DNA of 64,000 nt from Heteronotia binoei (Eukaryota): the NCBI RefSeq assembly GCF_032191835.1, contig NC_083233.1, positions 9,796,001 through 9,860,000 on the forward strand, in the 5' to 3' direction. Of the stretch, positions 7,622 to 47,849 are shown piece by piece. How positions within the stretch are numbered: the stretch's first letter is position 1; every line of letters starts with the position of its first letter. The position numbers were made by a program, and so were the translations under genes. Below the pieces are notes generated by a model. It had not been told where the DNA came from and searched no databases. It saw only the letters and a list, made by a program, of their open reading frames with translations.

Positions 7622-7937
7622 ATGGGGCGTGGGGGTCTGTATGTTCTTGTCCTCTTGGGTCTGTTTGTGGTTGCAACTGAAAGCAACAAGGCTGCTGGGG
7701 CTGGCTGCTGGGTGAAGGGGAACAATATGACCATCCACCCTCAACAATGCCCAGCAGAGTTTCCGGATGCAGACCCCAGGTTTTGCTGCCGCCTTTGCTA
7801 TGGTCCCAACTGCTGCATGCCCAGGAGGCCCCGGGTGAACCAAGACAAGTGTCCCCCTATGGCCCGGCTGTATTGGCCTATCCGAGATCGCAGAGCAGCC
7901 CCTGATCCGGAGATTAGAGGGACTCGAAAATGGGAAG
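7622..7937 (+). CDS. Shisa-like gene ShL-1, exon 1 (signal peptide + 8-Cys domain)
   Basis: MGRGGLYVLVLLGLFVVATES signal-like N-terminus, then C-x13-CP-x10-CC-x2-C-x4-CC-x11-CP. Donor GAAG|GTAAGA at 7937/7938, phase 1. Confidence 0.85.
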
Positions 7938-8469
7938 GTAAGATGGCTTCCGTGTTCTTGTAATTGTTGAAGTTGTTTAAGCTAGGGAACTCTGATTTTA
8001 TTCGGGGGCTTCATTTATTTTCTGTCCCGCCCTCCACAAAAAAATAGCAGACTCTAAATGGGGTTATATTGTCCTTCTCTGTTTTGTCCTCACAACAACC
8101 CTGGGAGGTAGGTTGGGCAGAGAGTTTGTGAGTGGCTCAAGGTCACCCAGCAAGCTTCTGTGGCAGAGGGGGGAGGTGAGCCCGGATCTCCCAGACTCCA
8201 GTCGGACCCTCTAATCACAGCACCGCTCTTGTTTTCTTCCCAAAGGGTCAAGAGTCCTTCCCGCCTCCCTTCCCTTTGCAGCCTTACCGGCCCTTCCCTT
8301 CAAAGATTGCCAGCTCCAGGCAGGGAGAAAAGGGGACAGAACAAACAGCCCAACACCCAAAAGCTTGCTATGTATATATGATGGTTTGTCCTTCCCTTCT
8401 TCAGCGGCCTTTGATTTTTTGCCTCTCAAAAACTGGACTGATGTATAGCATTTTAGGCCACTCTCCCTT

Positions 8470-8672
8470 TAGGGTTGTCAACCTCCAGTTGAGACCCAGA
8501 GATCTTCTGGAATTGCAACAGGTCACAAGGCTGCAGACATCAAACCCCCCTGGTGAAAATGCCCCTTGGAGTTGGGGGCTCTATGGTAGGACACTCCACT
8601 GAGGTCCCTCCCCTCCCCAGAGTCCACCCACAAAACCTCCAGGAATTGCCCACCTGGAGCAGGCAACCCTGG
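8470..8672. mobile_element. Short hAT-like MITE (tagggttg...gcaaccct family) in the ShL-1 intron
   Basis: TIR-like ends. Similar short copies occur near 9500-9780, 18500-18700, 29190-29405, 47085-47265, 49835-50040, 50485-50695 and 55990-56175. Confidence 0.6.
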
Positions 8673-9044
8673 GGGGCAAGAGACCCCCCCCCCATGCTAA
8701 GTTTGACGCACTAGCCATGGTTCAGTGGCAGAGCCTCTGCTTGGCATGCAAAAGCCCCCTCCCCCCGCCCCCACACAGTGCCTGGCCTCTGGAGTAGGAA
8801 GGATCAGGCCCAAGACCTCGTTTCTGCCTGCAGGGGAGACAGTGCAGGCCTTTTGCACAGGAAGGATTCTGCCCTTGGATCCGGGAGGGCTGCCAGCTCT
8901 GGGATGGTTTGGAGGCGGAGCCTGGAGATGGGGGAAGGTTGGAGGGAGGGACTTCCGCAGGATAGAATGCCCCTGAGTCCACCTTCCAAAGCAGCCGCTT
9001 TCCCCCAGGTAACCCAAAAAGAGTAACGTGGAAAATGGAGCAGG

Positions 9045-9499
9045 TAGAAAGCACTAAAGCATCCACGATAAGCCAGCCTCAAGAATAAATAATTTCTATT
9101 CATATACAAAACATAGAAACCTTGTGCCGTTGTTACTCTGCGGAAAGGATTGAGCTATTGCCATGTATAATGTTATAAAAGATACTGAAGCTTGTAGAAG
9201 CCATGTGTGAAACAGTGCCCTGTGGCGTCAACGTGGCTTGCTGTCGTAATGATCTACACCGGTTACTTCTAGAGAAGAACTGGAGCATTGCTCTCTGTCT
9301 TCATGGCTTGTCTTATCACATTCCGGACCCTTCTCTACGAAAACAAGAACTTTTATTGTGAACTTTGAACTTACGGGACTCGGATGTGATATCATTGCAC
9401 CTTTGTAATAATTATCGCACAAGGTTTCTGTGTTTTGTATATGAATAGAAATTATTTATTCTTGAGGCTGGTTTATCGTGGATACTTTAGTGCTTTCTA
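9045..9499. mobile_element. Non-autonomous DNA transposon with 83-bp terminal inverted repeats
   Basis: 9045-9127 and 9417-9499 are reverse complements (3 mismatches). Termini are TAG...CTA, flanked by AGG on both sides. Confidence 0.85.
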
Positions 9500-9899
9500 A
9501 GGCTGCCAGATCCCCCGGCCGGTGATGGGGGTAGAGCGGGTGGATCCAGGTTGGGGAGATCCTGGAGATCTGTGGGCGGAGCCTGGGAGGTAGAATGTTA
9601 CGCAGCCCCCCACCCCACCCCCAGCGGGCATTTCCTTCCCTTGGGAACTGGTCTCTTGGTCTGGAGGTCCCCAGGTCCCACCTGCAGGCTGGCATTCCTG
9701 TCTCCTGGGGAGCTGATCTTGGCCATCTGGAGATCAATTTTATCAAGGGGGCATCTCTCAGGGCCACCTGGAGTTTGGCAAGGGGTGTTTTTGCAGGGGG
9801 TGGGGGGTGGTGACGGTATCAAAGGGAGGTGAAAAATGCAAGGGACTGGGTTGGGGTGTCTGCAAGGGTGATTGACACGGGCTTTCTTTCTGTTTTCAG

Positions 9900-10813
9900 T
9901 TTTGTGTTATCTTGGCATCCTCATTGGACTTTTGGCACTGGCTGTCATCTTTACAGCCACCAACTGCTACCGACATTGCAAAAGGTGCTTGAAATTCTGC
10001 TGGAAACTCTGCCTCAGAGAGGAACAGGCCCAACCCAGAGTCAACATCCCGTCTTCCAGGGTCCTTTTTCACAACCCTCCAAGGTCCAACGATCTCTCTG
10101 ACTTCCTTCTTCAACCCTATACTATACCTAGGGGAGACCCACCACCATACTCTCTGGTAGACCCTCAAAGAACCCGTGACTTGCCACCCCCATATCCTGG
10201 ACAATCTGCAGAAGACCCTCAAGGAATCCGTAACTTGACACTGCCATATTCTGAAGGACCTGTGGTGGCATTCCACCATTCAAGATCTCAAGCACAAGAT
10301 GATACGGTGGTCCTCTTCCCTGTGCTGGTGGCCCCACCAGAGGCAGCTGCATCTGGTGGTGTCCCAAAGGAGGTGTCCGTGACTGGCAGTGCCCCAGACA
10401 AGGTGGACAAGCTGGAGGCGGCTGCAACTGGCACTGCCCGGGAGGAGGTGGACTGGCCAGAGGTGGCTGCAACTGGCGGTGCCCCAGAGGAGGTGGACTG
10501 GCCAGAAGCGGCTGCAACTGGAGGTGCCCCAGAGGAGGTGGACTGGCCAGAGGCGGCTGCAACTGGCGGTGCCCCAGAGGAGGTGAACTGGCCAGAGGCG
10601 GCTGCAACTGGCATTGTCCGGGAGAAGGTGGACTGGCCAGGGGTGGCTGCAACTGGCACTGCCCGCGAGGAGGTGGACTGGCCAGAGGCGGCTGCAACTG
10701 GCGGTGCCCCAGAGGAGGTGGACTGGCCAGAGGTGGCTGCTTCTGGCGGTGCCCCTAAGGATGCAGACTTGGAGGTAGTGGTTTCTGGTGGTGCCCCCAA
10801 ACTTCCAGAATAA
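9900..10813 (+). CDS. Shisa-like gene ShL-1, exon 2 (TM helix, Cys cluster, PPPY motifs, acidic repeat tail)
   Basis: Acceptor ctttctttctgttttcAG| at 9899, phase 1, joins exon 1 in frame (G+TT = Val). TM VLCYLGILIGLLALAVIF, then CYRHCKRCLKFCWKLC, DPPPYS and LPPPYP. TAA at 10811-10813. Confidence 0.85.
10396..10790 (+). repeat. In-frame 45-bp coding minisatellite, about 8-9 units (EEVDWPEAAATGGAP)
   Basis: Repeated gaggaggtggactggccagaggcggctgcaactggcggtgcccca with no frame-breaking indels. Confidence 0.95.
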
Positions 10814-10823
10814 TCAGGATGCC

Positions 10824-11646: not shown

Positions 11647-11652
11647 AATAAA
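11647..11652 (+). terminator. Putative polyadenylation signal of ShL-1
   Basis: AATAAA followed by a GT-rich downstream segment, about 830 nt after the stop codon. Confidence 0.6.
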
Positions 11653-12820: not shown

Positions 12821-12824
12821 CAAC

Positions 12825-15539: not shown

Positions 15540-15546
15540 TATAAAA
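15540..15546 (+). promoter_or_regulatory. TATA box of ShL-2
   Basis: TATAAAA 92 nt upstream of the strong-Kozak ATG at 15632. Confidence 0.6.
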
Positions 15547-15631
15547 GCTGCCAGGGAGGGGCTCCTCTTTTGTGTTCTTTGGAGCATTTCTAGAGTTGTT
15601 ATCGAGTTGTATGTTAGAGCAAGCTGGTGCG

Positions 15632-15932
15632 ATGGAGAGAGTAGGGTTGTGTTTTTTTCTGGTTTTGTTTCCAGGGGCTGTCTGGGCAGATGAAATATGT
15701 TATAGGTGGACTGAGGGGGTGCCATACCCTGTGGAAGTCTTTCACTGCCCAACACAAGAGGATAGGGCTGGTGTCAACTTCTGCTGTGGGACTTGTTACG
15801 CCCCCTTCTGCTGTTCATCTGAAGAGACTCGGCTGGATCAGGACCAGTGCCCTGGAAGTGTTCAGTGGAATGCAGGCAGCCCGCATCTGATGACCAACAT
15901 CTCTGAGGACCTGCTAACAGCAACTACCCTGT
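15632..15932 (+). CDS. Shisa-like gene ShL-2, exon 1
   Basis: MERVGLCFFLVLFPGAVWA signal, then EICYRW..FHCP..NFCCGTCYAPFCCSSEETRLDQDQCPG (8 Cys). Donor T|GTAAGA at 15932/15933, phase 1. An in-frame ATG at 15611 is an alternative start. Confidence 0.88.
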
Positions 15933-16234: not shown

Positions 16235-16864
16235 TGTCTTTTTCTGTCTTAACTGAGTACGTTTGGATCCCTGGGTAGCAGCACAGAAGGCAACAGGACA
16301 TAGAGAGGAGGTGTACAGGAAGTTGTAATTCCAGGAGATTCCAGTCCCCGCATGGAAGTTGGCAACCTCTACTTCTTTTGCACTTGTGAATGTGACTTGG
16401 AAAGGAGAGGGAGGGGAGGGGGCTTTCTTGGCAGCAGGGGAAATGGAAGATCTAAGCGTTGGCAGTGGGGCTGGGCAAGGCAGAGGGAAGACGTACTTTG
16501 TGCAGTGGCCTCTGGTGATTTTTGACATGGGTCTCTGCTCTATTTTCTGTCTATTTTTCTGTCTTAACTGAGTACATTTGGATTCCTGGGTAGCAGCTCA
16601 GAAGACAACAGGACATAGAGAGAAAGTGTACAGGAAGTTGTAATTCCAGGAGATTCCAGTCCCCGCATGGAAGTTGGCAACCTCTACTTCTCTTGCACTT
16701 GTGAATGTGACTTGGAAAGTGGAGGGAGGGGAGGGGGCTTTCTTGGCAGCAGGGGAAATGGAAGATCTAAGCGTTGGAAGTGGGGCTGGGCAAGGCAGAG
16801 GGAAGACATACTTTGTGCAGTGGCCTCTGGTGATTTTTGACATGGGTCTCTGCTCTATTTTCAG
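16235..16864 (+). repeat. 315-bp tandem duplication of the 3' end of the ShL-2 intron
   Basis: gtcttaactgagtac at 16246 and 16561, and gtctctgctctatttt at 16531 and 16846, give a period of 315. Confidence 0.95.
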
Positions 16865-17211
16865 CTAACTTTATCGCTGCCATGCTAGTGTTTGGGGTAA
16901 TGGCCATTGTGGTCCTTGATGTTTTCCTGTGTTGCTATGTGATCCTGCACTGCTCACATGCCCGTGATGAAGCTCGACAGCGGAGCCAAGCCACAGAGGA
17001 CAGAGACCCTTCAAGCCATGACTCTTCTCCAAGAGGATACCTCTATCATCTAAAGCGCCAGCTTAGTAACCTTTCTATGAGAGTCGGTGTCGACAACCCA
17101 CTTTGTTCTTATGGTGCCTGCGATGACCAAGTTGTGCCACCTTCTGCAGAGGACACTGCACCCCCCCAGGACTCCTCCCTCCCATATGCAAATACACCTG
17201 TCTGGTTCTAG
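16865..17211 (+). CDS. Shisa-like gene ShL-2, exon 2
   Basis: Acceptor tgctctattttcAG| at 16864, phase 1 (T+CT = Ser). TM FIAAMLVFGVMAIVVLDVFLCCYVIL. Tail ends SLPYANTPVWF, with TAG at 17209-17211. Confidence 0.85.
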
Positions 17212-18332: not shown

Positions 18333-18338
18333 AATAAA
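18333..18338 (+). terminator. Putative polyadenylation signal of ShL-2
   Basis: AATAAA at the end of a UTR that shares blocks with the ShL-1 and ShL-3 UTRs. Confidence 0.55.
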
Positions 18339-18917: not shown

Positions 18918-19269
18918 AGGAAGGGATGGTGAGCTCAGTAGTAGAGCATCTGCTTGGGAAGCAGAAGGTCCCAGGTTCAATCCCCGGCATCTCCAACTAA
19001 AAAGGGTCCAGGCAAATAGGTGTGAAAAACCTCAGCTTGAGACCCTGGAGAGCAGGGGAGGGACGGTGGCTCAGTGGTAGAGCATCTGCTTGGGAAGCAG
19101 AAGGTCCCAGGTTCAATCCCTGGCATCTCCAACTAAAAAGGGTCCAGGCAAATAGGTGTGAAAAACCTCAGCTTGAGACCCTGGAGAGCCGCTGCCAGTC
19201 TGAGAAGACAATACTGATTTTGATGGACCGAGGGTCTGATTCAGTAGAAGGCGTCTTCATATGTTCATA
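18918..19269 (+). mobile_element. Dimeric tRNA-derived SINE (truncated left monomer + full right monomer)
   Basis: Junction GAGACCCTGGAGAGC|AGGGGAGGG at about 19053, identical to the junction at about 44844. Confidence 0.85.
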
Positions 19270-21667: not shown

Positions 21668-22366
21668 TGAAGCCAGTTTGGTGTAGTGGTTAAGTGTGCG
21701 GACTCTTATCTGGGAGAATTGGGTTTGATTCCCCACTCCTCTACTTGGACCTGCTGGAATGGCCTTGGGTCGGCCATAGCTCTGGCAGAGGTTGTCCTTG
21801 AAAGGACAGCTGCTGGAGAGCCCTCTCCAGCCTCACCCACCTCACAGGGTGTCTGTTGGTGGGGAGGAAGGTAAAGGAGATTGTGAGCCGCTCTGAGACT
21901 CTTCGGGGGGGTGGGATATAAATCCAATATCTTCATCTACCTCACAGGGTGTCTGTTGTGGGGGGGGGGGAGGTAAAGGAGATATTGAGCCGCTCTGAGA
22001 CTCTTTGGAGTGGAGGGTGGGATATAAATCCAATATCTTCATCTACCTCACAGGGGTGTCTGTTGTGGGGGAGGAAGGTAAAGGAGATTGTGAGCGCTCT
22101 GAGACTCTTTGGAGTGGAGGGTGGGATATAAATCCAATATCTTCATCTACCTCACAGGGTGTCTGTTGTGGGGGAGGAGGGAAGGTAAAGGAGATTGTGA
22201 GCCGCTCTGAGACTCTTTGGGGTGGAGGGTGGGATATAAATCCAATATCTTCATCTACCTCACAGGGTGTCTGTTGTGGGGGAGGAAGGTAAAGGAGATT
22301 GTGAGCTGCTCTGAGACTCTTCGGAGTGGAGGGGAGATATAAATCCAATATCATCTTCTTCTTCTG
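21668..22366 (+). mobile_element. Squam3-type SINE with five tandem copies of its 3' part
   Basis: tRNA-like head gccagtttggtgtagtggttaag...gggtttgattccccactcctc. acctcacagggtgtctgttg recurs at about 21839, 21939, 22046, 22149 and 22257. (TTC)n tail. Confidence 0.85.
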
Positions 22367-22478
22367 CACACATCTAGTAGAGGTTATGGATGCAACAACC
22401 CTCTCTTGGCAGGAAACTTAGCTGGGAAGTAGCTGATCCCCGCCCCCCTCTCCTCCAGGTGTTAGTTATCTTTGGGGG

Positions 22479-22571
22479 CCAATTGCTGGTGGGGCAAATG
22501 AGAGTGATTGGACGGAAACCAGCTAAGTCTCTAGTCCTCAGTAAGGGCATTTTCTCGTGGGCAGTATAAAT
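22479..22571 (+). promoter_or_regulatory. Putative ShL-3 core promoter (CCAAT 22479, TATAAAT 22565)
   Basis: TATA 76 nt upstream of the ATG at 22641. Confidence 0.55.
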
Positions 22572-22640
22572 GTGGCTGAGAAGAACCCTTTCCTGAGCTC
22601 TATTTATTTATTTATTTATTATTTATTGGGCTTAATTCAC

Positions 22641-22953
22641 ATGGGTGGTTCTTGGCGCAGCTACGGGGAGAGTTGGACTGTGCATCTGGTTTTGCTGGTG
22701 TCTCTCACAGCTGCTGTGGCTGGGCCTGGGGGAGAAATCTGCCACTACTGGACTGCAGGAGCAGAATCACCAGCTGGAGCCTTCCAGTGTCCGGAACCAG
22801 GAAAGCGGGACAACGCGGGGGACGCATTCTGCTGCGGGACTTGCAGTGTGTCCTATTGCTGCTCGTCTGCAGATGCTGGAGCCCGGCTGGAGCAGGAGAG
22901 GTGCCCTGGCAGTGACCGGCTGCTGGTCCCCTTTGTGCCACCAGCTACCCATC
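22641..22953 (+). CDS. Shisa-like gene ShL-3, exon 1 (most SHISA2/3-like copy)
   Basis: GEICHYW...FQCPEP...GDAFCCGTCSVSYCCSSADAGARLEQERCP resembles the recalled SHISA2 pattern GEYCHGW..FQCPE..GDATICCGSC..YCCSSAEARLDQGGC. Donor C|GTAAGC at 22953/22954, phase 1. Confidence 0.88.
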
Positions 22954-23177
22954 GTAAGCTTGCTTTCTCCACACCTAGTTGTGGTGGGGGGTGGGGGAGG
23001 GGTCTGAAAAAGACCTTTTATACAAAAGGTGATTTTGGTAAAACGTTTGAGTCCCTTTAAGTCCAACAGTGCGTGCACATGAAAGCTTAGCCCCGGAATA
23101 AAACTTCGTTGGTTTTAAAGTTGCCGCTGGACTCCAACTTTGTTCTGCTGCTTCAAACCAACACATCCATCCCCTTG

Positions 23178-23455
23178 AAGAAGATGATGGTTTTGGATTT
23201 ATATCCCACCCTATACTCTGAGTCTCAGAGCGATCACAATCTCCTCTACCTTCCCCCCCCCCCTCACAACAAACACCCTGTGAGGTAGGTGGGGCTGAGA
23301 GAGCTCTTACAGCACCTGCCCTTTTAATGACAACTCCTGTGAGAGCTTTGGCTAACCCAAGGCCATTCCAGCAGCTGCAATTGGAGGAGCGGGGAATCAA
23401 CCTGGTTCTCCCAGATAAGAGTCCACACACTTAACCACTACACCAAACTGGCTCT
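23178..23455 (-). mobile_element. Squam3-type SINE
   Basis: Reverse complement of the 21668 head and body. Similar copies near 40760-41010, 43820-44010 and 50050-50310. Confidence 0.8.
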
Positions 23456-23574
23456 TGGTAGTTATCTTGGTAGGTAGTTATCTTGGTAGCTAGAGTGGTG
23501 CTTCCTTTCCTTCCATTGCAGATGAGTCTGCTGATCCTTCCTAGCCCTCCCTTTTTCCTGCCCAGGTGTACAAG

Positions 23575-24085
23575 AAAGTAACAAAGACGACTACAAATGG
23601 AAAAATTTCCAAAAGAAGATAGAACTTTAATCTGGTACTTGCTCTCAGCCACTAGGACATTGTATGCGCAATTGTGGAAGCAAGAAAAAATACCAGAGAA
23701 ATGGGATTGGATTATAAAAGTTATGACATGGAGTGAAATGGACAAATTAACAAGAATATTAAGAGACTATGACTTAGACGTTTTTAAGATGGAATGGAAA
23801 AAGTTTAGAAGATATGTAGAAAAAGAGTGGAAAATAAGAGGACATTGGACAATCTTTAATAATTAAGTTTTAAAAAGAAGAATATAATTTTTTGTTTTAA
23901 TAGTTAAGAGTACCTTTAAATATTTGCATTTTAAGTAAAGAACACTGGCGGGGGTCAAGTAATGGGGGGAGGGGGTGGGTAGAATGTCAAATATGGGGTA
24001 GATAAAAGAAGCTCTTTTTTTAAAGATGTAAGATATAGATTTATTACCATATGTTGCCAATAAAATTGTTTTAAACTCAAAAAGA
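23575..24085 (+). mobile_element. L1-clade LINE 3' end
   Basis: LLSATRTLYAQLWKQEKIPEKWDW...EWKKFRRYVEKEW, then an AT-rich UTR, AATAAA and an A-rich tail. Second copy at about 43365-43760. Confidence 0.7.
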
Positions 24086-26027
24086 AAGAAACAAAGACAG
24101 ACAGACATGAAAGAAAGGCACGAAACAACAAACATGCCTTATCTTGAGCCAGATATCAGTTTTTGTCTACTCAGATGCCTATCGGATTATTTTATCTGGA
24201 GATGTTGAAGACTGAACCTGGGACCTCGTGCCTGCCAAGCAGATGCTCTACCACTGAGCCACAGCCGCCTAGCTTTCCCCCACTAGTTTAACCCTTTAGT
24301 TATGCAGCTGCATCCCTCTATAGAGAGTGTCAAGTGGGTAGTCTTGTTGGTCTCCAGTAGAAGAGCGAGGCTGGAGTCCAGTAGCACCCTAGAAACCAAC
24401 AAGATCCCCACGCTATTATGCTTTAGAGAGTTACAAGAAGAGGGAGCTTTGGTTCTGTGAAGCTGACACTCTGGAGATCTGGGGATAAAGTGGAATCAAG
24501 TTGCAGCTGCCTGTAGGTTTTCCAAGGCAAAAGGTGGTTTGCTGTTGGCAACTCCCATTCAAGTACTAACCAGAGCCGGCCCGGCTTCGCTGTCGAGAGT
24601 CAATGAGCTCAAGCTAGCCTGGCCCATGCAGGTTAGAGAATCTAGCTGGTCTTTTGGGTATCGCTGGACTTGAACTTTATATTCTCTATCTAGATTAAAT
24701 GGTAACTTGAGTGCAGAGTTGCTAACAATCTGGAGAGGAAAAGATCTGTCCCTGTATTGACCACGTGAAGCTATTTATGTCCTCGCCTGGAAAAACTCCA
24801 CCTGCCCATTTTGACGTCTTATTAAAAGGACAGGGCAACTTTCGACAAGCTTGGTTCAGTCCTGTCCAATGGGATGCTGGGTGAGGCTCTGCTGTTATTG
24901 GGAGTTGTCAAACTGGCCTGGTCTTTTGAAACAGAGGCTTAACTTGTGGCAATGAACAGCAAAAGCTCTTTGTGGCCAGGAATTAAATAAACCCACCTGG
25001 TCAATAACATCCTATTCAACCTCCGTTAAGAACAGGGCACTTCTTTCCCCATGGCACAGAGTGGTCAGCTGCAGCACTGCAGTCCAAGTTCTGCTCACAA
25101 CCTGAGTTTGATCCCGGCAGAAGCTGGGTTCAGGTAGCCAGCTCAAGGTTGACTCAGCCTTCCATCCTTTCAAGGTCAGTAAAATGAGCACCCAGTAAAA
25201 AGTCTGCCAAGAAAACGTTATGATGTGACGTCACCCCATGGGTCGCTAATGACTCGGTGCTTGCACATGGGACTATCTTTATCTTTACTTCTTTCACCAG
25301 GCAGTTGGCAACCTAAACAGCATCCAGATTCCTTTAGAAAGTTCCTAAGTGGACCATAAAAGGAACGGCTTGCCCTCTTGCCGAGTCCCTGGCACCTTGT
25401 CTTCAGAAATATGCTGTTTCTACTTAACCACCCTGTTTCATGGGTGTTGGTGGCTCTTGGTTCTCCACAAATAGGTTTACTTTCCTTTAAAACCATCTGA
25501 GTCGGGGCCTGCTATATCCTCTCACTTGTGGAGTGAGCTGGGCTGCATTCTCTTTTTTTGGTTTTCAGTTCGTTGCCATGGATTACAGAGAAAAACAACC
25601 TTTTCCTGCCTGGTGGAGGTGGTGGGAAGTGCTCTCAAGTTGCAGCTGATTTAGGGTGGCCCTACAGAGTTCTCAGGGCAAGAGGTGGTTTGCCAGGGCC
25701 CTCCCATCCAAGTAGCGACCAGGTCTCCCTTTTCTGTCTGCCTTCTCCAGACTCTGCATACTTGGCTGAATCTCCATCATGTCATGCAGCACCCCTGCGC
25801 TTTTGCAAAGAAACTGTTTGGTAGCCTTTCACTTTAGGGAAGCTCTCTAACCCCTGGGTTGCCAACTCTGGACTGGGACGTTCCTAGAGATTTGGAGGTT
25901 TGTTTGCTATCAGATTTCTATCAGACTTCACCAAATGCAGTCCTAAATGAAACGTCTCTGGAGAAGCTGGGGGGGAGGGGAGGGAGACAGGAAAGAATCT
26001 GATTCTCCTCTCTGAGAAGGATGGGGG

Positions 26028-26528
26028 TAGGGTTGCCAAGTCCAATTCAAGAAATATCTGGGGACTTTGGGGGTGGAGCCAGGAGACATTAGGGGCGGAG
26101 CCAGGAGCAAAGGTGTGACAAGCATAAGTGAACTCCAAAGGGAGTTCTGGCCATCACATTTAAAGGGACGACACACCTTTTCAATTCCTTCCTTCCATAG
26201 GAAATAATGAAGGATAGGGGCACCTTCTTTTGGGGCTCATAGAATTGGACCCCCTGGTCCAATCTTTTTGAAACCTGGAGGGTATTTTGGGGAGAGGCAC
26301 TAGATGCTATACTGAAAATTTGGTGCCTCTACCCCCAAAAACAGCTCCCCCAGATCCCCGCGGATCAAGTCTCCATGATTTTCTGTGAGACTAAATCTCC
26401 ATAGGGAATAATAGAGTTCCCAGCAGACATTTCCCTCCCCTCCCCCCGCTTTCTGATGACCCTGAAGCGGGGGGGAGGGCCTCCAAACTGGGGGATCCCC
26501 TGCCCCCACCTGGGGATTGGCAACCCTA
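26028..26528. mobile_element. Intact hAT-type MITE with a perfect 8-bp TSD
   Basis: TAGGGTTGCCAA...TTGGCAACCCTA flanked by GATGGGGG on both sides. Confidence 0.92.
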
Positions 26529-26714
26529 GATGGGGGTGTTTTCCTGGATGGGGGGGGAGACAGGCCAGTTCCATGGGCTGGAAATGAAACTGGGGGGTGG
26601 GGAGAGAGACCAGCCCTTCCTCAGTCCCTAGCCTCTCACTCCCTGCTGGAGTCTGGGGACCAGGGGAGGGACACGGCAACCCAACTAAGGACTCTTCTCT
26701 GTCTTTTTTCCCAG

Positions 26715-27175
26715 CTTACCCGTATTCATTCTACATTGGTGTGGGACTAACCGCAGTTGCCTTGTTGGCTATCATGGCTTACCTTATCTACTTAAAAATC
26801 TGCCTGCCACTGAGGACCTGGGTTCGAGTTCACCAGCAGGTCCGTCAGCAGGAGATGCCTCTTTCGAGGGTTTCTTTCCAGGACCCTTCTCCAACCTTCA
26901 CTTACAGTCTTGGTTCAAGGCTCCGGAGCCCTAACCCACCTCCCCTTTACCAGGCCTTGACAGCCATTCGACTCACAAATCCTCCTCCTTCAGCACAGAT
27001 GGGCCCGCTCAGTCCAGCCAAGTGGACTCTGGTCTCTCAGGGGATGATGCAGCCGGTTCCTCTCCTGCAGCAGCTCTTCTGGATCCAGCTGCCTCTGGGG
27101 GGACTCCAGAACCAGAGGAATAAGCGACCAGCTCATGTCATGGGGTGCTTGTCTGCATGGGATAGAGTCACATAG
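26715..27175 (+). CDS. Shisa-like gene ShL-3, exon 2
   Basis: Acceptor ctgtcttttttcccAG| at 26714, phase 1 (C+CT = Pro). TM FYIGVGLTAVALLAIMAYLIYL. MPLSRVSFQDP matches ShL-1 IPSSRVLFHNP. PPLY motif. TAG at 27173-27175. Confidence 0.83.
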
Positions 27176-28144: not shown

Positions 28145-28150
28145 AATAAA
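28145..28150 (+). terminator. Putative polyadenylation signal of ShL-3
   Basis: AATAAA followed by GT-rich sequence, downstream of a UTR block shared with ShL-2. Confidence 0.55.
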
Positions 28151-28827
28151 GTGTGGGGTGTTGGCCTCTCGAACAAGTGTTTGCACAGATTTCTGACTCC
28201 CTCACTCCAAACCAGCCAGTCTCAGTTGCTTGTTAATGCAGTCCAATTCATTCTTCTTAGCATGACTCCCAGATTAGCCTTTTCTTGTTCAAACCACCAA
28301 TTTAGTGCTGGAACAGGAATGGGGAACAGCAAGCCTCATTTCACAAAAGTCTTGGATCTGGCTTTCCAGAGGGGGGGTCCCCTGTTTGGCTGGGTCTGTA
28401 ATCTGAAAAGGGCATAGCCATTCACCCCCCTACAGCCCCAATGTGGAGCTGATACCTTTCCTGGCCCCTGCCATGTGCTTTTTAGACAGTGGATGGGGCC
28501 CAGGTTTGGGGGGGGGGGAGTTGCCCACAAGACATCTGATCGGCTGTGCAGACGTTTTGAAATTGCTTTGGCAGCAGCTGTCGCTACACTACAAGGATCT
28601 TCACAGTGTGACTGAAGGGGAGCCATACTGTGATTGACCCTGCCTCCTGTGGCAGCCGTTTTGTGGCAGTTGTTTTGTAGCTGGGCCCACCATGCTGTAC
28701 CAGAACTCAAAGGTGCCTGCAAAAACGCTGGGAACCCCTGGTGCTCTACAGGCTAAGGCAAGCAAAAATGGGAGGTTTTTCCTTGGGGCTTTTGCTGTAC
28801 CTATAATAGAAGCTAAGGTTAAAAAAG

Positions 28828-38697: not shown

Positions 38698-38699
38698 AT

Positions 38700-41589: not shown

Positions 41590-42350
41590 ATGGCTACACA
41601 AAACAGATTCGGAAGCGGCAACCCCACGACCCTTTCTTCAAGGGCAAGCCCCGTCACGGCACTCCCGAAGGCTCACGTCCAACGCAGCCGTGCCCGGGGC
41701 TCTTCCCGGCCGCCCTGTGTCCTTGGGGGCCAATCGCTGGGCGGCGAGGGGCCCGCAGGGGCACGGGATTGGCTGGGCCCTTGTGGAGGGGCGGGGGCGA
41801 GGAGGCAGGGCGCCAGTCCTCATGAAGTGGAGCCGCTCGGGCCGCTATAAAAAGCGGCTGCGGCGGGCTCCGGCTTGAGACTTGCCGGCCATGGAGCAGC
41901 AGCGGCGGTGGCGCTGGGTTGCGGGCCTGGTGGCGCTGCTGGCGTGTTGCCTGCGGGGGGCGCTCGCCTTCGAGGTGGACGAGGAGTGCTGCGAGTGGTG
42001 GGCCGAGAGCGTGGAGTGGCCGGTGGGCGCCAGCGAGTGCCCCGTGAACCCCGACGACCTGCAGGAGACCTACTGCTGCGGCCTCTGCTTCGCCCAGCAC
42101 CAGACCAACGTCCCCCAAGGCTGGCTGGACGACGTCTGCCCCGTCGACGATCCCCTGCCTGCCGCGTCTGGCTCGGCGTCGAGCTCCGGCGGGGGTAAGG
42201 CGGCTGCAGCCCGGGGGGGGGGGGGAGTCCAGCCTGTTGGGCAGCTTTCCTGCCTCGACGGGCGGCTCTGCGGGCTCCTTCGAGGAAGCGGCGCCGGGCA
42301 GCCCTTCCCGTCCAGGATGCCTTCCCGGGCGTGGCCTCCTTCACCCCGGG
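41590..42350. promoter_or_regulatory. CpG island with ShL-4 promoter (CCAAT 41730, inverted CCAAT 41768, GC box 41788, TATAAAAA 41846)
   Basis: The only long CpG-dense, very GC-rich stretch in the window. It covers the promoter and exon 1. Confidence 0.8.
41891..42194 (+). CDS. Shisa-like gene ShL-4, exon 1 (7-Cys variant)
   Basis: Kozak gccATGG. Signal MEQQRRWRWVAGLVALLACCLRGALA, then ECCEWW..SECP..TYCCGLCFAQHQT..WLDDVCP. Donor G|GTAAGG at 42194/42195, phase 1. Confidence 0.82.
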
Positions 42351-42352
42351 CT

Positions 42353-44712: not shown

Positions 44713-45278
44713 AGGGGAGGGACGGTGGCTCAGTGGTAGAGCATCTGCTCGGGAAGCAGAAGGTCCCAGGTTCAATCCCTGGCATCTCCAAAAAGGGTCC
44801 AGGCAAAGAGGTGTGAAAAACCTCAGCTTGAGACCCTGGAGAGCAGGGGAGGGATGGTGGCTCAGGGGTAGAGCATCTGCTTGGGAAGCAGAAGGTCCCA
44901 GGTTCAATCCCTGGCATCTCCAAAAAAGGGTCCAGGCAAATAGGTGCGAAAAACCTCCGCTTGAGACCCTGGAGAGCCGCTGCCAGTCTGAGAAGACAAT
45001 ACTGACTTTGATGGACCGAGGGTCTGATTCAGTATAAGGCAGCTTCATATGTTCATGTTTTGGGGAGGGATGGTGGCTCAGTGGTAAAGCATCTGCTTGG
45101 GAAGCAGAAGGTCCCAGGTTCAATCCCTGGCATCTCCAAAAAAAGGGTCCAGGCAAATAGGTGTGAAAAACCTCAGCTGGAGACCCTGGAGAGCCGCTGC
45201 CAGTCTGAGAAGACAATACTGACTTTGATGGACCAAGGGTCGGATTCAGTATAAGGGAGCTTCTTATGTTCATATATA
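44713..45278 (+). mobile_element. Head-to-tail array of tRNA-derived SINEs (dimer + monomer)
   Basis: Heads at about 44713, 44845 and 45062. The first monomer is truncated at the same point as at 18918-19053. Confidence 0.88.
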
Positions 45279-45490
45279 TGTTCAGTGAAATACAGTTGAG
45301 GAGGAGGAGGAGCTATTCTGGATCACCTCGTTGGGCTGAACTGGTTTTATTCTTCTCTATGCCAAGCTTCTCCTGGAGAATGTGGGGGCTCGCTGGTGGA
45401 GGGAGGGGGAGGAGGCAGCCCTGTGGCCTGGAATGAAGATGGGAGTGAATAAGGCTTCTAATGATACTCTTCTGTCTCCCCCCCGCCCAG

Positions 45491-45882
45491 GTTTTTGGGG
45501 CTCCGCCATCGCTCTGATTGTCCCAGCAGTTTTCCTGATCCTCTTCTTCTGTGCCTGGCTGTGGCTGAAGGACACCCCCAGGGGCCCTGCCGTCGGTTCT
45601 GGCTCCACCAGAGGCTCCTCTTCCTCCCGGCTTCGGTCCTGTTATGGTGTCCGTTCAATGCCAAATGCGCTGAAGTTCATGCTTCCCACCTCCAAACCCC
45701 AGGACTCGCCCGCTCTCTCTGAAAATACTCATCTTCAGTTCTGTCAGCCAGCTGGGGCGAATGATGGCGTCTTGAGTCCTGTGGTGGTTCTGGGGCCCCC
45801 GGAGGAGCCTGTGCCTAGCGAGGCCCTGGAGGAGCCTGTGCCTGGGGGGCCCCCAGAGGAGCCTGCCTTGCCAGCCGAGTAA
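45491..45882 (+). CDS. Shisa-like gene ShL-4, exon 2
   Basis: Acceptor cttctgtctccccccc.gcccAG| at 45490, phase 1 (G+GT = Gly). TM FWGSAIALIVPAVFLILFFCAWLWL. Tail ends with (P/L)EEPV repeats. TAA at 45880-45882. Confidence 0.82.
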
Positions 45883-46205
45883 CCTGTGAATCCAAGTTGA
45901 CTTGAGGGCTGACCTCGGATGATGTGTCTGCATGTCGTGCAGTCACACAGCTTGTTTTTAGAATCTTTTTAGGGTCCAGGAAACATGTGAGATTGTGCTT
46001 TTATTATAGGCTAAAATGAGGGGGGGGGTTCCTTTTAAAATGTGTCAGGACATGCCCAAAGATGTTACTCGCTGTTGTTGTGGGTGGTGTGTTGGGCTGA
46101 CGGGGAAGCACTCCCTCCTCCCCCAGCTCACGGAGGCGTTTTGAAAGGGTGGGTTTTATGGAACGCTGGAGGCCACCTCGCTGGAAGCTGTGTCTGTTTG
46201 GAGTA

Positions 46206-46211
46206 AATAAA
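46206..46211 (+). terminator. Putative polyadenylation signal of ShL-4
   Basis: AATAAA about 325 nt after the stop codon. Confidence 0.55.
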
Positions 46212-47573
46212 GAATCTACAGGGAAAAAAGTACTTGTGCCGGCTCTTCTTTACACTATGATGTCAGGGTATTGTGTGCTAAAGGTCTCCTAATCTGAGCC
46301 TTTGAAGACCCAAGTTTACAACCTCTCCTCTCCCTGGCTTAACTAGTCCTGCCCTGGCCCAGTCTGCTCTGACCTCAGAAACTTAAACAGGGTCAGCCAC
46401 GGAAATAGATCAAGGCAGGTAGTTGTGTTAGTCTTTCTGTAACAGTAGGATAAAAAGAGCAAGCGTCCAGCAGCACCTTGAAGACTAACTTGAGGCAGGG
46501 CAGGAGCTTTCTGTGAGTCCCTGAAGAAGTGAGCAGTCTTGAAAGCTCCTCTCCGGCCACCAATTTGTGTAAGTCTTTAAGGAGCTGCTGGACTCCTGCT
46601 CTTTCTACAGGGTCAGCCATGGGCAGCATTTGGATGGGAGACCATCAAGGAAGCCCAGGGTCACTACGCGCAGGCAGGCAGCAGCCAACCACCTCTGCTC
46701 ATCTCTCTGGGCCTTAAACATCTCTCTGTGACTTGACGGCACTTTGCAGACAAAACCAAAATTTCAACAAGACGGGGCGATTTTACAGAGATTTAGGTGG
46801 GCAGCCGTGTTGGTCTGAAGCAGTAGAACAAAGCAAAGTCAAGAAGCACCTTTAAGACCAACAAAAGTTTTATTCAGAATGGAAGCTTTTGTGTGGCTGC
46901 ACACTTCTTCAGGTGAGGAATGAGGTGCAGGAAGGAGAGCTACGTACAGCTGGTGGGATTTAGAAGGCAAAGCGGCAGTGCAGCAGCTTGACTAACGCTG
47001 GGCGGTCAGGGCCTCAAGCGGGTGCAGAGCTTGAAGGACGGGAGCCACTGATACCCAATGGGCCATCCTGAGGCCAGGGTTGCCAACTTTGGGTTCTGAA
47101 GTACTTGGAGATTGGGGAGGGGGAGCCTGATGAGGGTGAGGTTTGGGGAAGGACTTCAAACCACCATAGAGTCCACCATCCCAAAGTGGCTGTTTTCTCT
47201 AGGTGGATCTGGAGGTCAGTTGTTACAGCAGGAGATCACCAGCCATCGCCTGGAGGTTGGTAGCCCTTCCAGAAGGTCTCAGGCGTCCTAAGAACACAGT
47301 TGCTTGTTAGGAGGGAGGGAATTTTAAGCAAGCAAAGCAGGTCTTATGAAATAAAGTGTGCTTCTCCCAGTAAGGAGAAGTATTGTTCTGCCATGGTTGC
47401 CCAGTATTGTTCTGCCCAGTATTCTGCCATGATTGTTGCTCTGCTTCTCTTGACAGAAAGAACAAGCGCAGCGGCCTTCACTGCTCTAGCCAAGCCAATG
47501 ATTTTTTTTACCATTTAGGTTGCTTTTTGCCTGGGTGGAAACTAAGCGATGGTGCAAGTTCGCTGCAGTGGGC

Positions 47574-47849
47574 TATAAAATGGGAGCAAGAGGCGGGCAC
47601 GTGATGGGGAGATTCACTTGGTCAGTTTGGCCAGACAGACTGGATTTTTTTTTTGTCTTCGCTGCAAATGCCGTTTTACAGAACGGATGCGCCAGGCACA
47701 GGCTGGGGGAAGCAGAAGCAATGAACTCGCTTTGCGTGTGCACACAGCCAGCCACATCTTTCTAGAAGAGAGCCATGTGCAGGTGGTGTTGCCTCTCTGA
47801 GGAAGGAATGGGAGCTTGCTTCCCCGGGGTTTTTTGGAGTAGCACCTGA
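47574..47849 (+). pseudogene. Possible decayed Shisa-like exon 1
   Basis: TATAAAA at 47574 and ATG at 47604. One frame reads MGRFTWSVW..FFFVFAANAVLQNGC...LCVCTQPATSF*KRAMCRWCCLSEEGMGACFPG, with CCLSEE resembling ShL-2 CCSSEE. Cys spacing is imperfect and there is an in-frame stop. Confidence 0.3.

What the first reader, a model, noticed from the sequence alone, without database searches (positions are those of the whole stretch)
7622..47849. Tandem array of highly diverged two-exon Shisa-like membrane-protein genes
Seen: four intact same-strand genes, each with a TATA-type promoter, exon 1 (301-316 nt; signal peptide + CP..CC-x2-C Cys domain), one phase-1 GT-AG intron, exon 2 (TM + juxtamembrane Cys + Pro-rich or acidic tail) and AATAAA. 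All four hand-splices stay in frame to a stop. Known: this architecture is the Shisa/STMC6 adaptor family (Pfam Shisa PF13908). As I recall, SHISA2/3 are two-exon, conserved, non-clustered genes that modulate Frizzled/FGFR maturation. Inference: this is a lineage-specific birth-and-death expansion of a SHISA2/3-like ancestor whose members no longer look constrained like SHISA2/3. Such clusters are typical of immune, gamete-recognition or secretory-tissue receptor families. I know of no description of such a cluster in squamates, but could not search.
Basis: partly seen in the sequence, partly recalled or inferred. Interest (0 to 1): 0.85.

Follow-up and report, generated by a model that had tools for sequence, protein, structure and literature searches.

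The report
Fast-evolving squamate Shisa-like gene cluster
This gecko window holds four intact neighbouring genes of a Shisa-type membrane-adaptor subfamily seen so far only in lizards and snakes; it evolves far faster than the classical Shisa genes, already carries automatic database names, and turned up in no paper I could search.

Summary
Window 7622-45882 (Heteronotia binoei, CM063335.1 at about 9.80-9.86 Mb) carries four intact, same-strand, two-exon genes. Each has a phase-1 GT-AG intron between a signal peptide plus Shisa_N cysteine domain and a transmembrane helix plus disordered tail.

- **Annotation:** RefSeq already models all four, as 'shisa-1-like', 'shisa-3-like' and an uncharacterized LOC. 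The name of the fourth model (g1) was not retrieved.
- **Family:** g2 and g3 pass Pfam Shisa_N. g1 and g4 fall below its cut-off but match a SHISA1-3 profile at 97-98% hhalign probability.
- **Not SHISA1, 2 or 3 proper:** the gecko's own SHISA2 lies on another contig. A 100/99-supported split separates 46 such sequences from the canonical genes.
- **Distribution:** every member I could name is a squamate, often several per contig.
- **Age:** g1, g3 and g4 have gecko orthologues, and g2-g3 adjacency is shared with Sphaerodactylus, so the paralogues are old.
- **Rate:** orthologues are 37-50% identical within geckos, against 95.5% for SHISA2. dN/dS is 0.66-0.73.
- **Turnover:** Paroedura carries a dead, inverted g2 copy.
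- **Origin:** the tree favours amniote SHISA1-like genes, but AU tests do not exclude SHISA2 or SHISA3.
- **Expression:** unproven. g3 exons had zero reads in three RNA runs.

The function as a PPxY-bearing receptor-trafficking adaptor is inferred only.

The parts
7622..7937 (+). g1 exon 1 (316 nt): signal peptide plus a complete 8-Cys Shisa_N-like domain
   Evidence: ATG after an upstream stop and a GT donor. Pfam Shisa_N scores 19.4 bits, below the cut-off of 22. hhalign of the g1 orthogroup against canonical SHISA1-3 gives 97.6% probability, E = 3.7e-12. A RefSeq gene starts here.
9900..10813 (+). g1 exon 2: transmembrane helix, 5 juxtamembrane Cys, two PPPY motifs, acidic repeat tail, stop codon
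   Evidence: AG acceptor, in frame to the stop. Motifs. The first PPPY is conserved in the Paroedura, Gekko and Sphaerodactylus orthologues.
10382..10755 (+). 45-nt x 8.3 tandem repeat encoding 15-aa acidic units in the g1 tail
   Evidence: Tandem Repeats Finder. The 349-aa RefSeq model equals my 409 aa minus 180 nt placed somewhere in this repeat. Repeat number and type differ among gecko orthologues.
7540..7546 (+). CATAAAA, a TATA-like variant about 80 nt upstream of the g1 ATG
   Evidence: No canonical TATA box within 400 nt upstream.
15632..15932 (+). g2 exon 1 (301 nt; RefSeq uses the in-frame ATG at 15611): signal peptide plus 8-Cys Shisa_N domain
   Evidence: Pfam Shisa_N 46.8 bits, E = 3.1e-12. 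100% identical to XP_060106141.1 'protein shisa-1-like'. TATAAAA at 15540.
16865..17211 (+). g2 exon 2: transmembrane helix, CC..C juxtamembrane Cys, tail with a conserved C-terminal motif shared with the Sphaerodactylus orthologue
   Evidence: The AlphaFold2 model has a helix over residues 99-152 at pLDDT above 90. AATAAA at 18333.
22641..22953 (+). g3 exon 1 (313 nt): signal peptide plus 8-Cys Shisa_N domain
   Evidence: Pfam Shisa_N 44.5 bits. TATAAAT at 22565. Orthologue P0007 in Sphaerodactylus, clade support 100/99.
22390..22542 (+). Alternative 5' coding exon used by RefSeq 'shisa-3-like isoform X1'; it replaces the signal peptide
   Evidence: tblastn of P0006 against the window. No reads in three RNA runs over 22500-22542; depth in the 22300-22499 bin was not resolved from the adjacent tandem repeat.
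26715..27175 (+). g3 exon 2: transmembrane helix, one juxtamembrane Cys, Pro-rich tail with one PPLY motif
   Evidence: 100% identical to residues 133-284 of P0006. ATTAAA at 27442 and AATAAA at 28145.
41891..42194 (+). g4 exon 1 (304 nt): signal peptide plus a modified Shisa_N domain with 7 Cys (doubled first Cys, second CC pair lost)
   Evidence: Pfam 15.8 bits, below cut-off. hhalign of the g4 orthogroup against SHISA1-3 gives 96.7% probability, E = 3.6e-10. The same Cys pattern is invariant in the Gekko and Paroedura orthologues. 100% identical to XP_060105497.1. TATAAAA at 41846.
45491..45882 (+). g4 exon 2: strongly conserved transmembrane helix, then a Ser/Pro/acidic tail without PPxY
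   Evidence: dN/dS over the transmembrane and juxtamembrane stretch is 0.22, against about 1.0 in the tail. AATAAA at 46206 and 47350.

Best explanation
**Shown.** The window holds four intact paralogous genes (g1-g4) of a rapidly evolving, tandemly arrayed subfamily of the SHISA1-3 branch of the Shisa family. Every member I could name comes from a squamate.

Each gene encodes a type-I single-pass membrane protein with these parts, in order:
- a signal peptide;
- a cysteine-knot-like Shisa_N ectodomain of about 55 residues, with 8 Cys in g1-g3 and 7 Cys in g4, which has lost the second CC pair;
- a transmembrane helix encoded at the start of exon 2;
- juxtamembrane cysteines;
- a disordered Pro-rich or acidic tail.

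The paralogues are old, because gecko-wide orthogroups exist. Each orthogroup keeps its own ectodomain signature, while the stalks and tails change very quickly. Copies are lost or inverted between gecko lineages.

**Inferred, at roughly 40-50%.** Like the characterised Shisa proteins, each paralogue would use its ectodomain and transmembrane helix to hold a client membrane receptor in the secretory pathway or at the cell surface. The tail would then recruit cytosolic machinery that controls the client's maturation, trafficking or degradation. In g1 (two PPPY) and g3 (one PPLY) that machinery would be WW-domain NEDD4-type ubiquitin ligases. g2 and g4 lack PPxY and presumably use other conserved tail motifs. 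The different ectodomains suggest different clients.

**Favoured but not proven.** The ancestor was the amniote SHISA1-like gene.
For: **Gene structure**
- Canonical splice sites and intact spliced reading frames.
- Identity or near-identity with RefSeq models.
- The same two-exon, phase-1 structure in relatives.

**Family**
- Pfam Shisa_N for g2 (46.8 bits) and g3 (44.5 bits) against a cut-off of 22.
- hhalign of the g1 and g4 orthogroups against canonical SHISA1-3: 97.6% and 96.7% probability.
- A profile of the four exon-1 peptides hits the solved mouse Shisa3 N-terminal domain, 5M0W, at E = 6e-11.
- The AlphaFold2 model of g2 matches 5M0W with TM-score 0.61 on the target. The top 29 Swiss-Prot structural matches are all Shisa proteins.

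**A distinct squamate subfamily**
- Only 159 hits among 1.84 billion representative proteins.
- All 25 members of the divergent group that could be named are squamates, several per contig.
- In the IQ-TREE analysis a 100/99 split separates 46 cluster sequences from the SHISA1-like, SHISA2 and SHISA3 sequences.
- The H. binoei SHISA2 gene is on a different contig.

**Age and turnover**
- Orthogroups of g1, g3 and g4 each have 100% support.
- The g2-then-g3 order is shared with Sphaerodactylus.
- The units share no DNA-level similarity.
- Paroedura has g1, an inverted g2 pseudogene with at least three stops, then g4.

**Rate**
- Gecko orthologues are 37-50% identical, against 95.5% for SHISA2 between H. 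binoei and Eublepharis.
- dN/dS is 0.66 for g1 and 0.73 for g4 at dS of about 0.67. It is lower in the g1 ectodomain (0.39) and the g4 transmembrane stretch (0.22).

**Adaptor motifs**
- 24 of 53 cluster members carry PPxY in the tail. SHISA1 and SHISA2 have none and SHISA3 has one.
- The first PPPY of g1 is conserved across geckos.

**SHISA1 side of the tree**
- The cluster groups with hare and bird SHISA1-like sequences, support 100/91.
- SHISA2 plus SHISA3 form their own clade, support 100/98.
Against: - No transcript evidence was obtained. g3 exons had zero depth in three RNA runs, about 10 million reads sampled from each, tissue unknown. No RNA run was listed as holding the g1, g2 or g4 sequence.
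- g1 and g4 fall below the Pfam gathering score.
- None of the four carries the [C/Y]CC[KQRT]C juxtamembrane signature of SHISA1-3 (against PMC10531659).
- High dN/dS, especially in the tails and in the g4 ectodomain (0.89-0.99), is also what relaxed constraint on the way to gene loss would give.
- g2 and g4 have no PPxY motif.
- No client, ligase interaction or cellular location has been tested for any member.
- About half of the divergent-group sequences could not be named, so non-squamate members are not excluded.
- AU tests do not reject placing the cluster with SHISA3 (p = 0.22) or with SHISA2 (p = 0.17).
- Synteny with a SHISA1 locus could not be established.
Confidence: 0.75

Rival explanations
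1. The four genes are simply the gecko orthologues of known conserved amniote Shisa-family genes (SHISA1, SHISA2, SHISA3, or relatives such as TMEM92, WBP1 or VOPP1) at a conserved locus.
For: RefSeq names them 'shisa-1-like' and 'shisa-3-like'. The best tree attaches the whole group next to amniote SHISA1-like genes.
Against: - Canonical SHISA2 of the same gecko sits on another contig and is 82-95% identical to other vertebrates, whereas these genes are about 25-30% identical to it.
- A 100/99 split separates them from all canonical SHISA1-like, SHISA2 and SHISA3 sequences.
- Four to five or more copies per squamate genome lie on one contig.
- There is no Pfam hit to any family other than Shisa_N.
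- The subfamily juxtamembrane signatures are absent.
Confidence: 0.05
2. The genes are decaying or non-functional duplicates, or gene-prediction artefacts, that happen to keep open reading frames. The high substitution rate reflects lost function.
For: - dN/dS is 0.66-0.73 overall and about 0.9-1.0 in the tails and the g4 ectodomain.
- No reads fell on g3 exons in three RNA runs, and no RNA run was found holding the other genes.
- The Paroedura g2 copy is a pseudogene.
- g4 has lost two framework cysteines.
Against: - Reading frames of 215-409 codons, splice sites and intron phase are intact in species separated by dS of about 0.67 or by saturated synonymous sites.
- Each orthogroup keeps long invariant ectodomain or transmembrane blocks: 29 invariant columns in the g1 group and 36 in the g4 group, including the altered Cys pattern.
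- dN/dS is 0.22-0.39 in those blocks.
- pN is below pS for g2 against Sphaerodactylus.
- TATA boxes and poly(A) signals are in place.
Confidence: 0.1
3. The array is a recent, gecko-specific birth-and-death expansion from a SHISA2- or SHISA3-like ancestor.
For: - g1, g2 and g4 fall in a weakly supported (81/81) gecko-only group.
- PPxY motifs resemble SHISA3 rather than SHISA1 or SHISA2.
- AU tests do not reject a SHISA3 or SHISA2 affinity.
- Copy content differs between Heteronotia and Paroedura.
Against: - Paralogues are only 26-32% identical and share no DNA-level similarity.
- g1 and g3 orthologues exist in Sphaerodactylidae, and g2-g3 adjacency is shared with that family.
- Divergent members occur across squamates. 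One orthogroup (92/91) spans an amphisbaenian, iguanians, a cordylid and a python.
- The best tree puts SHISA2 plus SHISA3 in a separate 100/98 clade.
Confidence: 0.1

Closest known systems
SHISA1 (Xenopus Shisa; 'shisa-1-like' of amphibians, fish, birds and lagomorphs)
   Same: - Shisa_N 8-Cys ectodomain with the extra insert between Cys2 and Cys3 that marks SHISA1-3.
- Type-I topology.
- Two-exon gene with a phase-1 intron before the transmembrane helix; the hare gene is built the same way.
- The best tree places the cluster next to amniote SHISA1-like sequences, support 100/91.
   Different: - No CCC[KQ]C juxtamembrane motif and no C-terminal PDZ-type ending (motifs as listed in PMC10531659).
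- Many copies in tandem instead of one.
- Much faster evolution.
- PPxY motifs in many members, none in SHISA1.
- Orthology is not established: AU tests are inconclusive and synteny is unresolved.
SHISA3 (solved N-terminal domain, PDB 5M0W)
   Same: - Same domain. The exon-1 profile hits 5M0W at E = 6e-11, and the g2 model superposes with TM-score 0.61 and 33% identity.
- RefSeq calls g3 'shisa-3-like'.
   Different: - SHISA3 is a single, conserved gene with a YCCTC juxtamembrane motif, which is absent here.
- The tree puts SHISA3 with SHISA2 in a 100/98 clade away from the cluster, although AU gives p = 0.22.
SHISA2
   Same: Same domain, topology and gene structure. Its known role as an antagonist of Frizzled and FGFR maturation in the endoplasmic reticulum is the template for the mechanism inferred here (PMC10531659).
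   Different: - H. binoei has its own SHISA2 on another contig. It is 95.5% identical to that of another gecko and 82% identical to mouse.
- The cluster genes have no CCCRC motif.
- The ATP8A2-SHISA2 synteny described in PMC10531659 was not seen here; RefSeq annotates no other gene across window 5.6-55.9 kb.
PY-motif transmembrane adaptors of the wider Shisa-like (STMC6) group: SHISA4, SHISA5, WBP1, VOPP1, TMEM92, CYYR1
   Same: Small single-pass proteins with a Cys-rich ectodomain and PPxY tails that engage WW-domain proteins or E3 ligases (family knowledge; PMC6125347 and PMC11399591 discuss WBP1/VOPP1 with WWOX and CYYR1 with WWP1). g1 has two PPPY motifs, g3 has one PPLY motif, and 24 of 53 cluster members have PPxY.
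   Different: - The profile search returned no sequence that was identified as one of these families: every hit that could be named is a SHISA1/2/3-type or squamate-cluster protein, and Pfam hits only Shisa_N.
- g2 and g4 lack PPxY.
- WW binding has not been tested.

Membership tests
Shisa family (Pfam PF13908 Shisa_N) | N-terminal cysteine-rich domain with the pattern C*C*CC*C*CC*C, recognised by the Shisa_N profile | tested here: met
   - g2 scores 46.8 bits and g3 44.5 bits against a cut-off of 22.
- g1 scores 19.4 and g4 15.8, both below cut-off, but their orthogroup profiles match canonical SHISA1-3 at 97.6% and 96.7% hhalign probability.
- g1, g2 and g3 have all 8 Cys.
- g4 has 7: it has lost the second CC pair and doubled the first Cys.
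Shisa family (Pfam PF13908 Shisa_N) | Fold of the solved Shisa N-terminal domain (mouse Shisa3, PDB 5M0W) | tested here: met
   - The g2 model has pLDDT of 80-91 over the domain.
- Its best PDB match is 5M0W: TM-score 0.61 on the target, 33% identity, 54 columns.
- The top 29 AlphaFold DB Swiss-Prot matches are all Shisa proteins.
- The sequence profile hits 5M0W at E = 6e-11.
- Only g2 was modelled.
Shisa family (Pfam PF13908 Shisa_N) | Type-I single-pass topology: signal peptide, ectodomain, one transmembrane helix, Pro-rich cytoplasmic tail | tested here: met
   Hydropathy finds an N-terminal segment and one transmembrane segment in all four proteins. Tails are 8-15% Pro. The AlphaFold2 model of g2 has helices over residues 8-19 and 99-152. 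No dedicated signal-peptide predictor was available.
SHISA1-3 clade | Long insert with a 'PExxDxxDA'-type signature between the 2nd and 3rd conserved Cys (PMC10531659, citing Pei and Grishin 2012) | tested here: met
   The insert is present in all four. The motif is clearest in g3 (PE...D..DA) and degenerate in g1, g2 and g4.
SHISA1-3 clade | Two coding exons with a phase-1 intron between the Cys domain and the transmembrane helix | tested here: met
   for the window. The same structure holds in the hare SHISA1-like gene and in the Paroedura, Anolis, Pogona and Sphaerodactylus relatives.
SHISA1, SHISA2 or SHISA3 orthogroups proper | Juxtamembrane signature [C/Y]CC[KQRT]C (CCC[KQ]C, CCCRC or YCCTC) | tested here: not met
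   g1 has dispersed C-x3-C-x2-C-x3-C-x3-C. g2 has CC-x5-C. g3 and g4 have a single Cys. Signatures as given in PMC10531659.
SHISA1, SHISA2 or SHISA3 orthogroups proper | Phylogenetic placement inside one of the three orthogroups | tested here: not met
   A 100/99 split separates all 46 cluster sequences from the 22 canonical ones. Which orthogroup they derive from is unresolved: AU p = 0.22 for SHISA3 and 0.17 for SHISA2, while the best tree is nearest to amniote SHISA1-like sequences.
SHISA1, SHISA2 or SHISA3 orthogroups proper | Conserved synteny (SHISA2 next to ATP8A2; the caecilian SHISA1-like gene next to an MTMR6-like gene) | tested here: inconclusive
   - RefSeq annotates no other gene across window 5.6-55.9 kb.
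- The Anolis member has a BTB-Kelch neighbour.
- The caecilian SHISA1-like gene has a myotubularin-related neighbour.
- The hare and bird loci show no neighbour within 10 kb.
PY-motif transmembrane adaptors (STMC6 sense) | Cytoplasmic PPxY or LPxY motif that binds WW domains of NEDD4-family ligases | tested here: inconclusive
   The motif is present in g1 (two PPPY) and g3 (PPLY) and absent from g2 and g4. The Gekko and Paroedura g4 orthologues have LPPxY in a stretch deleted from H. binoei g4. Binding cannot be tested with these tools.
Shisa family function | Retention or degradation of client receptors (Frizzled, FGFR, AMPA receptors) | not testable with these tools
   This needs cell-biological assays.

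The most novel reading that the evidence does not exclude
Squamates turned the SHISA1 gene, which the literature regards as absent from amniotes, into a tandem family of rapidly diversifying receptor-regulating adaptors. Each paralogue's ectodomain would track a different, fast-changing partner, such as immune or gamete surface receptors or viral envelope proteins. This would be the first Shisa subfamily shaped by an arms-race type of selection rather than by developmental constraint.
Probability: 0.15. Interest if true: 0.7.

Novelty: new variant of a known kind. Interest (0 to 1): 0.5.

Why it matters
Shisa proteins are known as slowly evolving, single-copy regulators of Wnt, FGF and AMPA receptor maturation. 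A subfamily that is multi-copy, tandem, squamate-restricted so far, and diverging about ten times faster in protein sequence than SHISA2 shows that the same small adaptor scaffold can follow a very different evolutionary course.

It offers natural variants for asking what the Shisa ectodomain recognises. It also bears on whether SHISA1 was really lost in amniotes. The practical finding is more modest: the genes are already in RefSeq under misleading automatic names ('shisa-1-like', 'shisa-3-like', 'shisa-2 homolog', 'shisa-5-like'), and no expression or function is known for any of them.

Tried and rejected
**Searches that gave nothing useful**
- The word-index homologue search with g2 returned only g2 itself.
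- The same search with a 54-sequence squamate profile returned only 4 proteins.
- The search with the mixed 120-sequence profile was dominated by canonical SHISA2 and SHISA3. It was useful only as a source of reference sequences.

**Fifth copy.** tblastn and a Cys-motif scan of all six frames found no further copy or relic in the window.

**Expression**
- Two run searches listed no RNA run as holding the stretch.
- The single read-laying run, on g3 at 22300-28299, gave zero depth on both exons and no 22953/26715 junction. All reads lay on intronic transposon copies, on both strands.
- This is no verdict on expression. The tissue is unknown and only about 6% of each run was read.
- g1, g2 and g4 junctions could not be tested.

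**Synteny.** The look-ups around Paroedura, Anolis, Pogona, Sphaerodactylus, caecilian, hare and bird genes gave no shared flanking gene. The Anolis BTB-Kelch gene has no counterpart in the window.

**Other look-ups**
- P0004 sits on a 2-kb Logan contig that reads like unspliced genomic DNA, so it is not transcript evidence.
- P0079 is not on record.

**Phylogeny.** The first quick tree was unreliable: a constrained tree scored higher than the free one. It was replaced by a careful search.

**Literature**
- No paper combined Shisa with squamates, and none mentioned the LOC identifiers.
- The key family paper, Pei and Grishin 2012, is not held in the library.

**Earlier scan notes.** There was nothing on this locus.

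**Other families.** WBP1, VOPP1 and TMEM92 were considered and rejected. There is no Pfam hit, and none was identified among the named profile-search hits.

Full report

Yes. I took the first ATG after an upstream in-frame stop and spliced at those sites. This gives exon 1 lengths of 316, 301, 313 and 304 nt, all 3n+1 and therefore phase 1. The open frames run to stops at 10813, 17211, 27175 and 45882 and encode 409, 215, 257 and 231 residues.

Each protein has the following:
- an N-terminal hydrophobic segment;
- the CP...CC-x2-C motif;
- a strongly hydrophobic transmembrane segment that starts at the exon junction;
- 1-5 juxtamembrane cysteines;
- a Pro-rich or acidic tail.

Promoter and 3' signals are as follows:
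- g2, g3 and g4 have canonical TATAAA(A/T) boxes 45-92 nt before the ATG.
- g1 has only CATAAAA at 7540.
- AATAAA or ATTAAA signals follow every stop.
- The stated end of the finding, 47849, is not a poly(A) signal.

tblastn with all eight exon peptides finds no fifth copy or relic in the window.

**2. Independent support for the gene models**

An exhaustive profile search with the four exon-1 peptides returned proteins identical to g2 and g4 and nearly identical to g3. These are RefSeq models of Heteronotia binoei:
- XP_060106141.1, 'protein shisa-1-like' (g2, which uses the in-frame ATG at 15611);
- XP_060105497.1, 'uncharacterized protein LOC132579263' (g4);
- XP_060105289.1, 'protein shisa-3-like isoform X1' (g3).

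The window is CM063335.1 at about 9,796,001-9,860,000.

The g3 isoform X1 model swaps the signal peptide for an upstream exon at 22390-22542.

g1 is annotated with the same start and stop but as 349 aa. The 180-nt difference can only be a gap placed inside the 45-nt tandem repeat of the tail, and seven equivalent GT..AG placements fit.

No other gene is annotated between window positions 5.6 kb and 55.9 kb. The rest of the window is transposon-rich.

**3. Which family?**

- Pfam Shisa_N (PF13908) is hit above its cut-off of 22 bits by g2 (46.8) and g3 (44.5). g1 (19.4) and g4 (15.8) fall below it. No other family is hit credibly.
- Profiles of the g1 and g4 gecko orthogroups match a profile of canonical SHISA1, SHISA2 and SHISA3 with 97.6% and 96.7% hhalign probability, E = 4e-12 and 4e-10.
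- The four-sequence exon-1 profile hits the one solved Shisa domain, mouse Shisa3 N-terminal domain 5M0W, at E = 6e-11.
- An AlphaFold2 model of g2 has pLDDT of 80-91 over the ectodomain and above 90 over the transmembrane helix. Its best PDB match is 5M0W, with TM-score 0.61 on the target and 33% identity. Its top 29 Swiss-Prot structural matches are all Shisa proteins.
- g1, g2 and g3 keep all eight framework cysteines.
- g4 has lost the second CC pair and doubled the first Cys. Its Gekko and Paroedura orthologues have the same arrangement, so it is an old, maintained change and not decay.

**4. These are not SHISA1, SHISA2 or SHISA3 themselves**

The gecko's own SHISA2 lies on a different contig of 195 Mb.

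I ran a careful IQ-TREE analysis of 68 sequences with the LG+C20 mixture model. A split with 100/99 support separates 46 divergent sequences, including g1-g4, from 22 canonical SHISA1-like, SHISA2 and SHISA3 sequences.

None of the four carries the juxtamembrane [C/Y]CC[KQRT]C signature that marks SHISA1-3 (signatures quoted from PMC10531659).

I could put names on 25 members of the divergent group. Every one is from a squamate:
- the geckos Paroedura, Sphaerodactylus and Gekko kuhli;
- Rhineura;
- Liasis;
- Anolis;
- Pogona;
- Lerista;
- Hemicordylus.

Often four or five of them sit on one contig. Their automatic names are inconsistent: shisa-1-like, shisa-2 homolog, shisa-2-like, shisa-3-like, shisa-5-like, or uncharacterized. 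About as many members remained unnamed, so 'squamate-restricted' is a well-sampled impression and not a proof.

Pogona shows another tandem stretch, including one unannotated Shisa-type exon 1.

**5. Age and dynamics**

- g1, g3 and g4 each sit in a gecko orthogroup with 100% support. The g1 and g3 groups include Sphaerodactylidae.
- The nearest relative of g2 is a Sphaerodactylus gene. That gene lies directly upstream of the g3 orthologue on the same strand, which is the order seen in the window.
- The paralogues are 26-32% identical and share no DNA-level similarity.
- So the four genes were already separate in the gecko ancestor. One non-gecko orthogroup (92/91) spans an amphisbaenian, two iguanians, a cordylid and a python.
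- Turnover is real. In Paroedura the g1 orthologue is followed by an inverted g2-like exon 1 with at least three in-frame stops, two of them at framework Cys codons. The g4 orthologue comes next, with no g3 between them.

**6. Rate and constraint**

| Comparison | Protein identity |
|---|---|
| Cluster orthologues within geckos | 37-50% |
| SHISA2, H. binoei vs Eublepharis | 95.5% |
| SHISA2, H. binoei vs mouse | 82% |

Nei-Gojobori dN/dS between H. binoei and Paroedura, at dS of about 0.67:

| Region | g1 | g4 |
|---|---|---|
| Whole gene | 0.66 | 0.73 |
| Ectodomain | 0.39 | 0.89 |
| Transmembrane and juxtamembrane | 0.28 | 0.22 |
| Tail | 0.86 | 0.99 |

For g2 against Sphaerodactylus the synonymous sites are saturated, and pN (0.41) is below pS (0.76).

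Reading frames, splice sites and intron phase are intact across these distances. Each orthogroup keeps long invariant blocks. So the genes are under selection, but far weaker or more changeable selection than on classical Shisa genes. The tails also evolve by gain and loss of short repeats.

**7. Origin**

In the best tree the cluster groups with hare and bird SHISA1-like genes (100/91), and SHISA2 plus SHISA3 form a separate 100/98 clade. This fits descent from the amniote SHISA1 lineage.

However, AU tests do not reject joining the cluster to SHISA3 (lnL difference 15.4, p = 0.22) or to SHISA2 (22.5, p = 0.17). Long branches are in play as well.

Synteny did not help:
- The caecilian SHISA1-like gene lies beside a myotubularin-related gene.
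- The Anolis cluster member lies beside a BTB-Kelch gene.
- The other loci show nothing within 10 kb.
- The window's own flanks hold only transposons.

**8. Expression**

This is the weak point. No indexed RNA run was listed as holding the sequence.

I laid three raw RNA-seq runs of the species, about 10 million reads sampled from each, on 22300-28299. Depth was zero on both g3 exons and no 22953/26715 junction appeared. All reads fell on intronic repeats, on both strands and with mismatches. The tissues are unknown, so this is no verdict. The other three genes could not be tested.

**9. How it probably works (inference)**

Shisa proteins are transmembrane adaptors. The ectodomain and transmembrane helix engage a client receptor, and the tail recruits cytosolic partners. 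SHISA1 and SHISA2 hold back Frizzled and FGFR maturation in the endoplasmic reticulum. PY-bearing relatives recruit WW-domain ligases (PMC10531659; the family view of Pei and Grishin 2012, cited there but not readable here).

In this cluster, 24 of 53 members carry PPxY in the tail, against none in SHISA1 or SHISA2 and one in SHISA3. g1 has two PPPY motifs, the first conserved across geckos. g3 has one PPLY. g2 and g4 have none, but each keeps its own conserved tail or transmembrane motif.

My best reading, at about 40-50%, is a set of paralogue-specific regulators of membrane-protein trafficking or degradation, some acting through NEDD4-type ligases, with clients unknown. Nothing here tests an immune, reproductive or antiviral role.

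**10. Novelty and verdict**

Full-text searches found no paper that links Shisa genes with squamates or that mentions these loci. The literature I could read states that shisa-1 is absent from amniotes.

The genes themselves are already in RefSeq under automatic names. So this is a real, ordinary-looking gene cluster that belongs to an undescribed, fast-evolving, lineage-restricted branch of a known family. I class it as a new variant of a known kind, of moderate interest.

Noticed in passing
window 3320-6821, minus strand: Open reading frames of an LTR retrotransposon lie just upstream of g1: gag-like with a CCHC knuckle (5730-6821), reverse-transcriptase-like (4114-5484) and integrase-like (3320-4213). 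They are described only.
   Followed up: no
window 49016-49823 (-), 58731-60671 (+), 61243-63169 (+): LINE reverse-transcriptase fragments. The last 4 kb of the window is AT-rich (GC 0.34-0.37) with strong positive GC skew.
   Followed up: no
window 16239-16862 (g2 intron): A 315-bp unit is duplicated in tandem (96% identical) and ends 2 nt before the g2 acceptor. The upstream copy has CTG where the downstream copy has the CAG acceptor, so only one acceptor is usable.
   Followed up: yes
window 10382-10755 (g1 tail): The RefSeq g1 protein (349 aa) is 60 residues shorter than the straightforward splice (409 aa). The gap must lie inside the 45-nt repeat. It could be a repeat-number allele in transcripts or an alignment artefact.
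   Followed up: partly
L002 16347-16574, minus strand (Paroedura picta): An inverted g2-like exon 1 with at least three in-frame stops, two of them replacing framework cysteines. It is an unannotated pseudogene between the g1 and g4 orthologues.
   Followed up: yes
L006 4684-5010 (Pogona vitticeps): An unannotated Shisa-type exon 1 lies between two annotated genes of the Pogona cluster. The neighbouring 406-aa and 231-aa models have no Pfam hit and may be further diverged members.
   Followed up: partly
L007 (Lepus europaeus) and L009 (GCA_001604755.1, which I recall as a bird assembly): Canonical SHISA1-like genes exist in lagomorphs and in this record. PMC10531659 says shisa-1 is not present in amniotes. 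The hare gene has the same two-exon, phase-1 structure.
   Followed up: partly
window 18922-19189 and 44846-45273: Copies of a tRNA-derived SINE sit as tandem pairs, one pair inside the g4 intron. The same element attracts most RNA-seq reads laid on the g3 intron, on both strands.
   Followed up: no
P0269 (Gekko kuhli g1 orthologue), alignment A5 columns 100-150: The stalk between the Cys domain and the transmembrane helix carries about six tandem copies of an 8-residue APGAETTA unit that the other geckos lack. This is a second, independent repeat expansion in this orthogroup.
   Followed up: no
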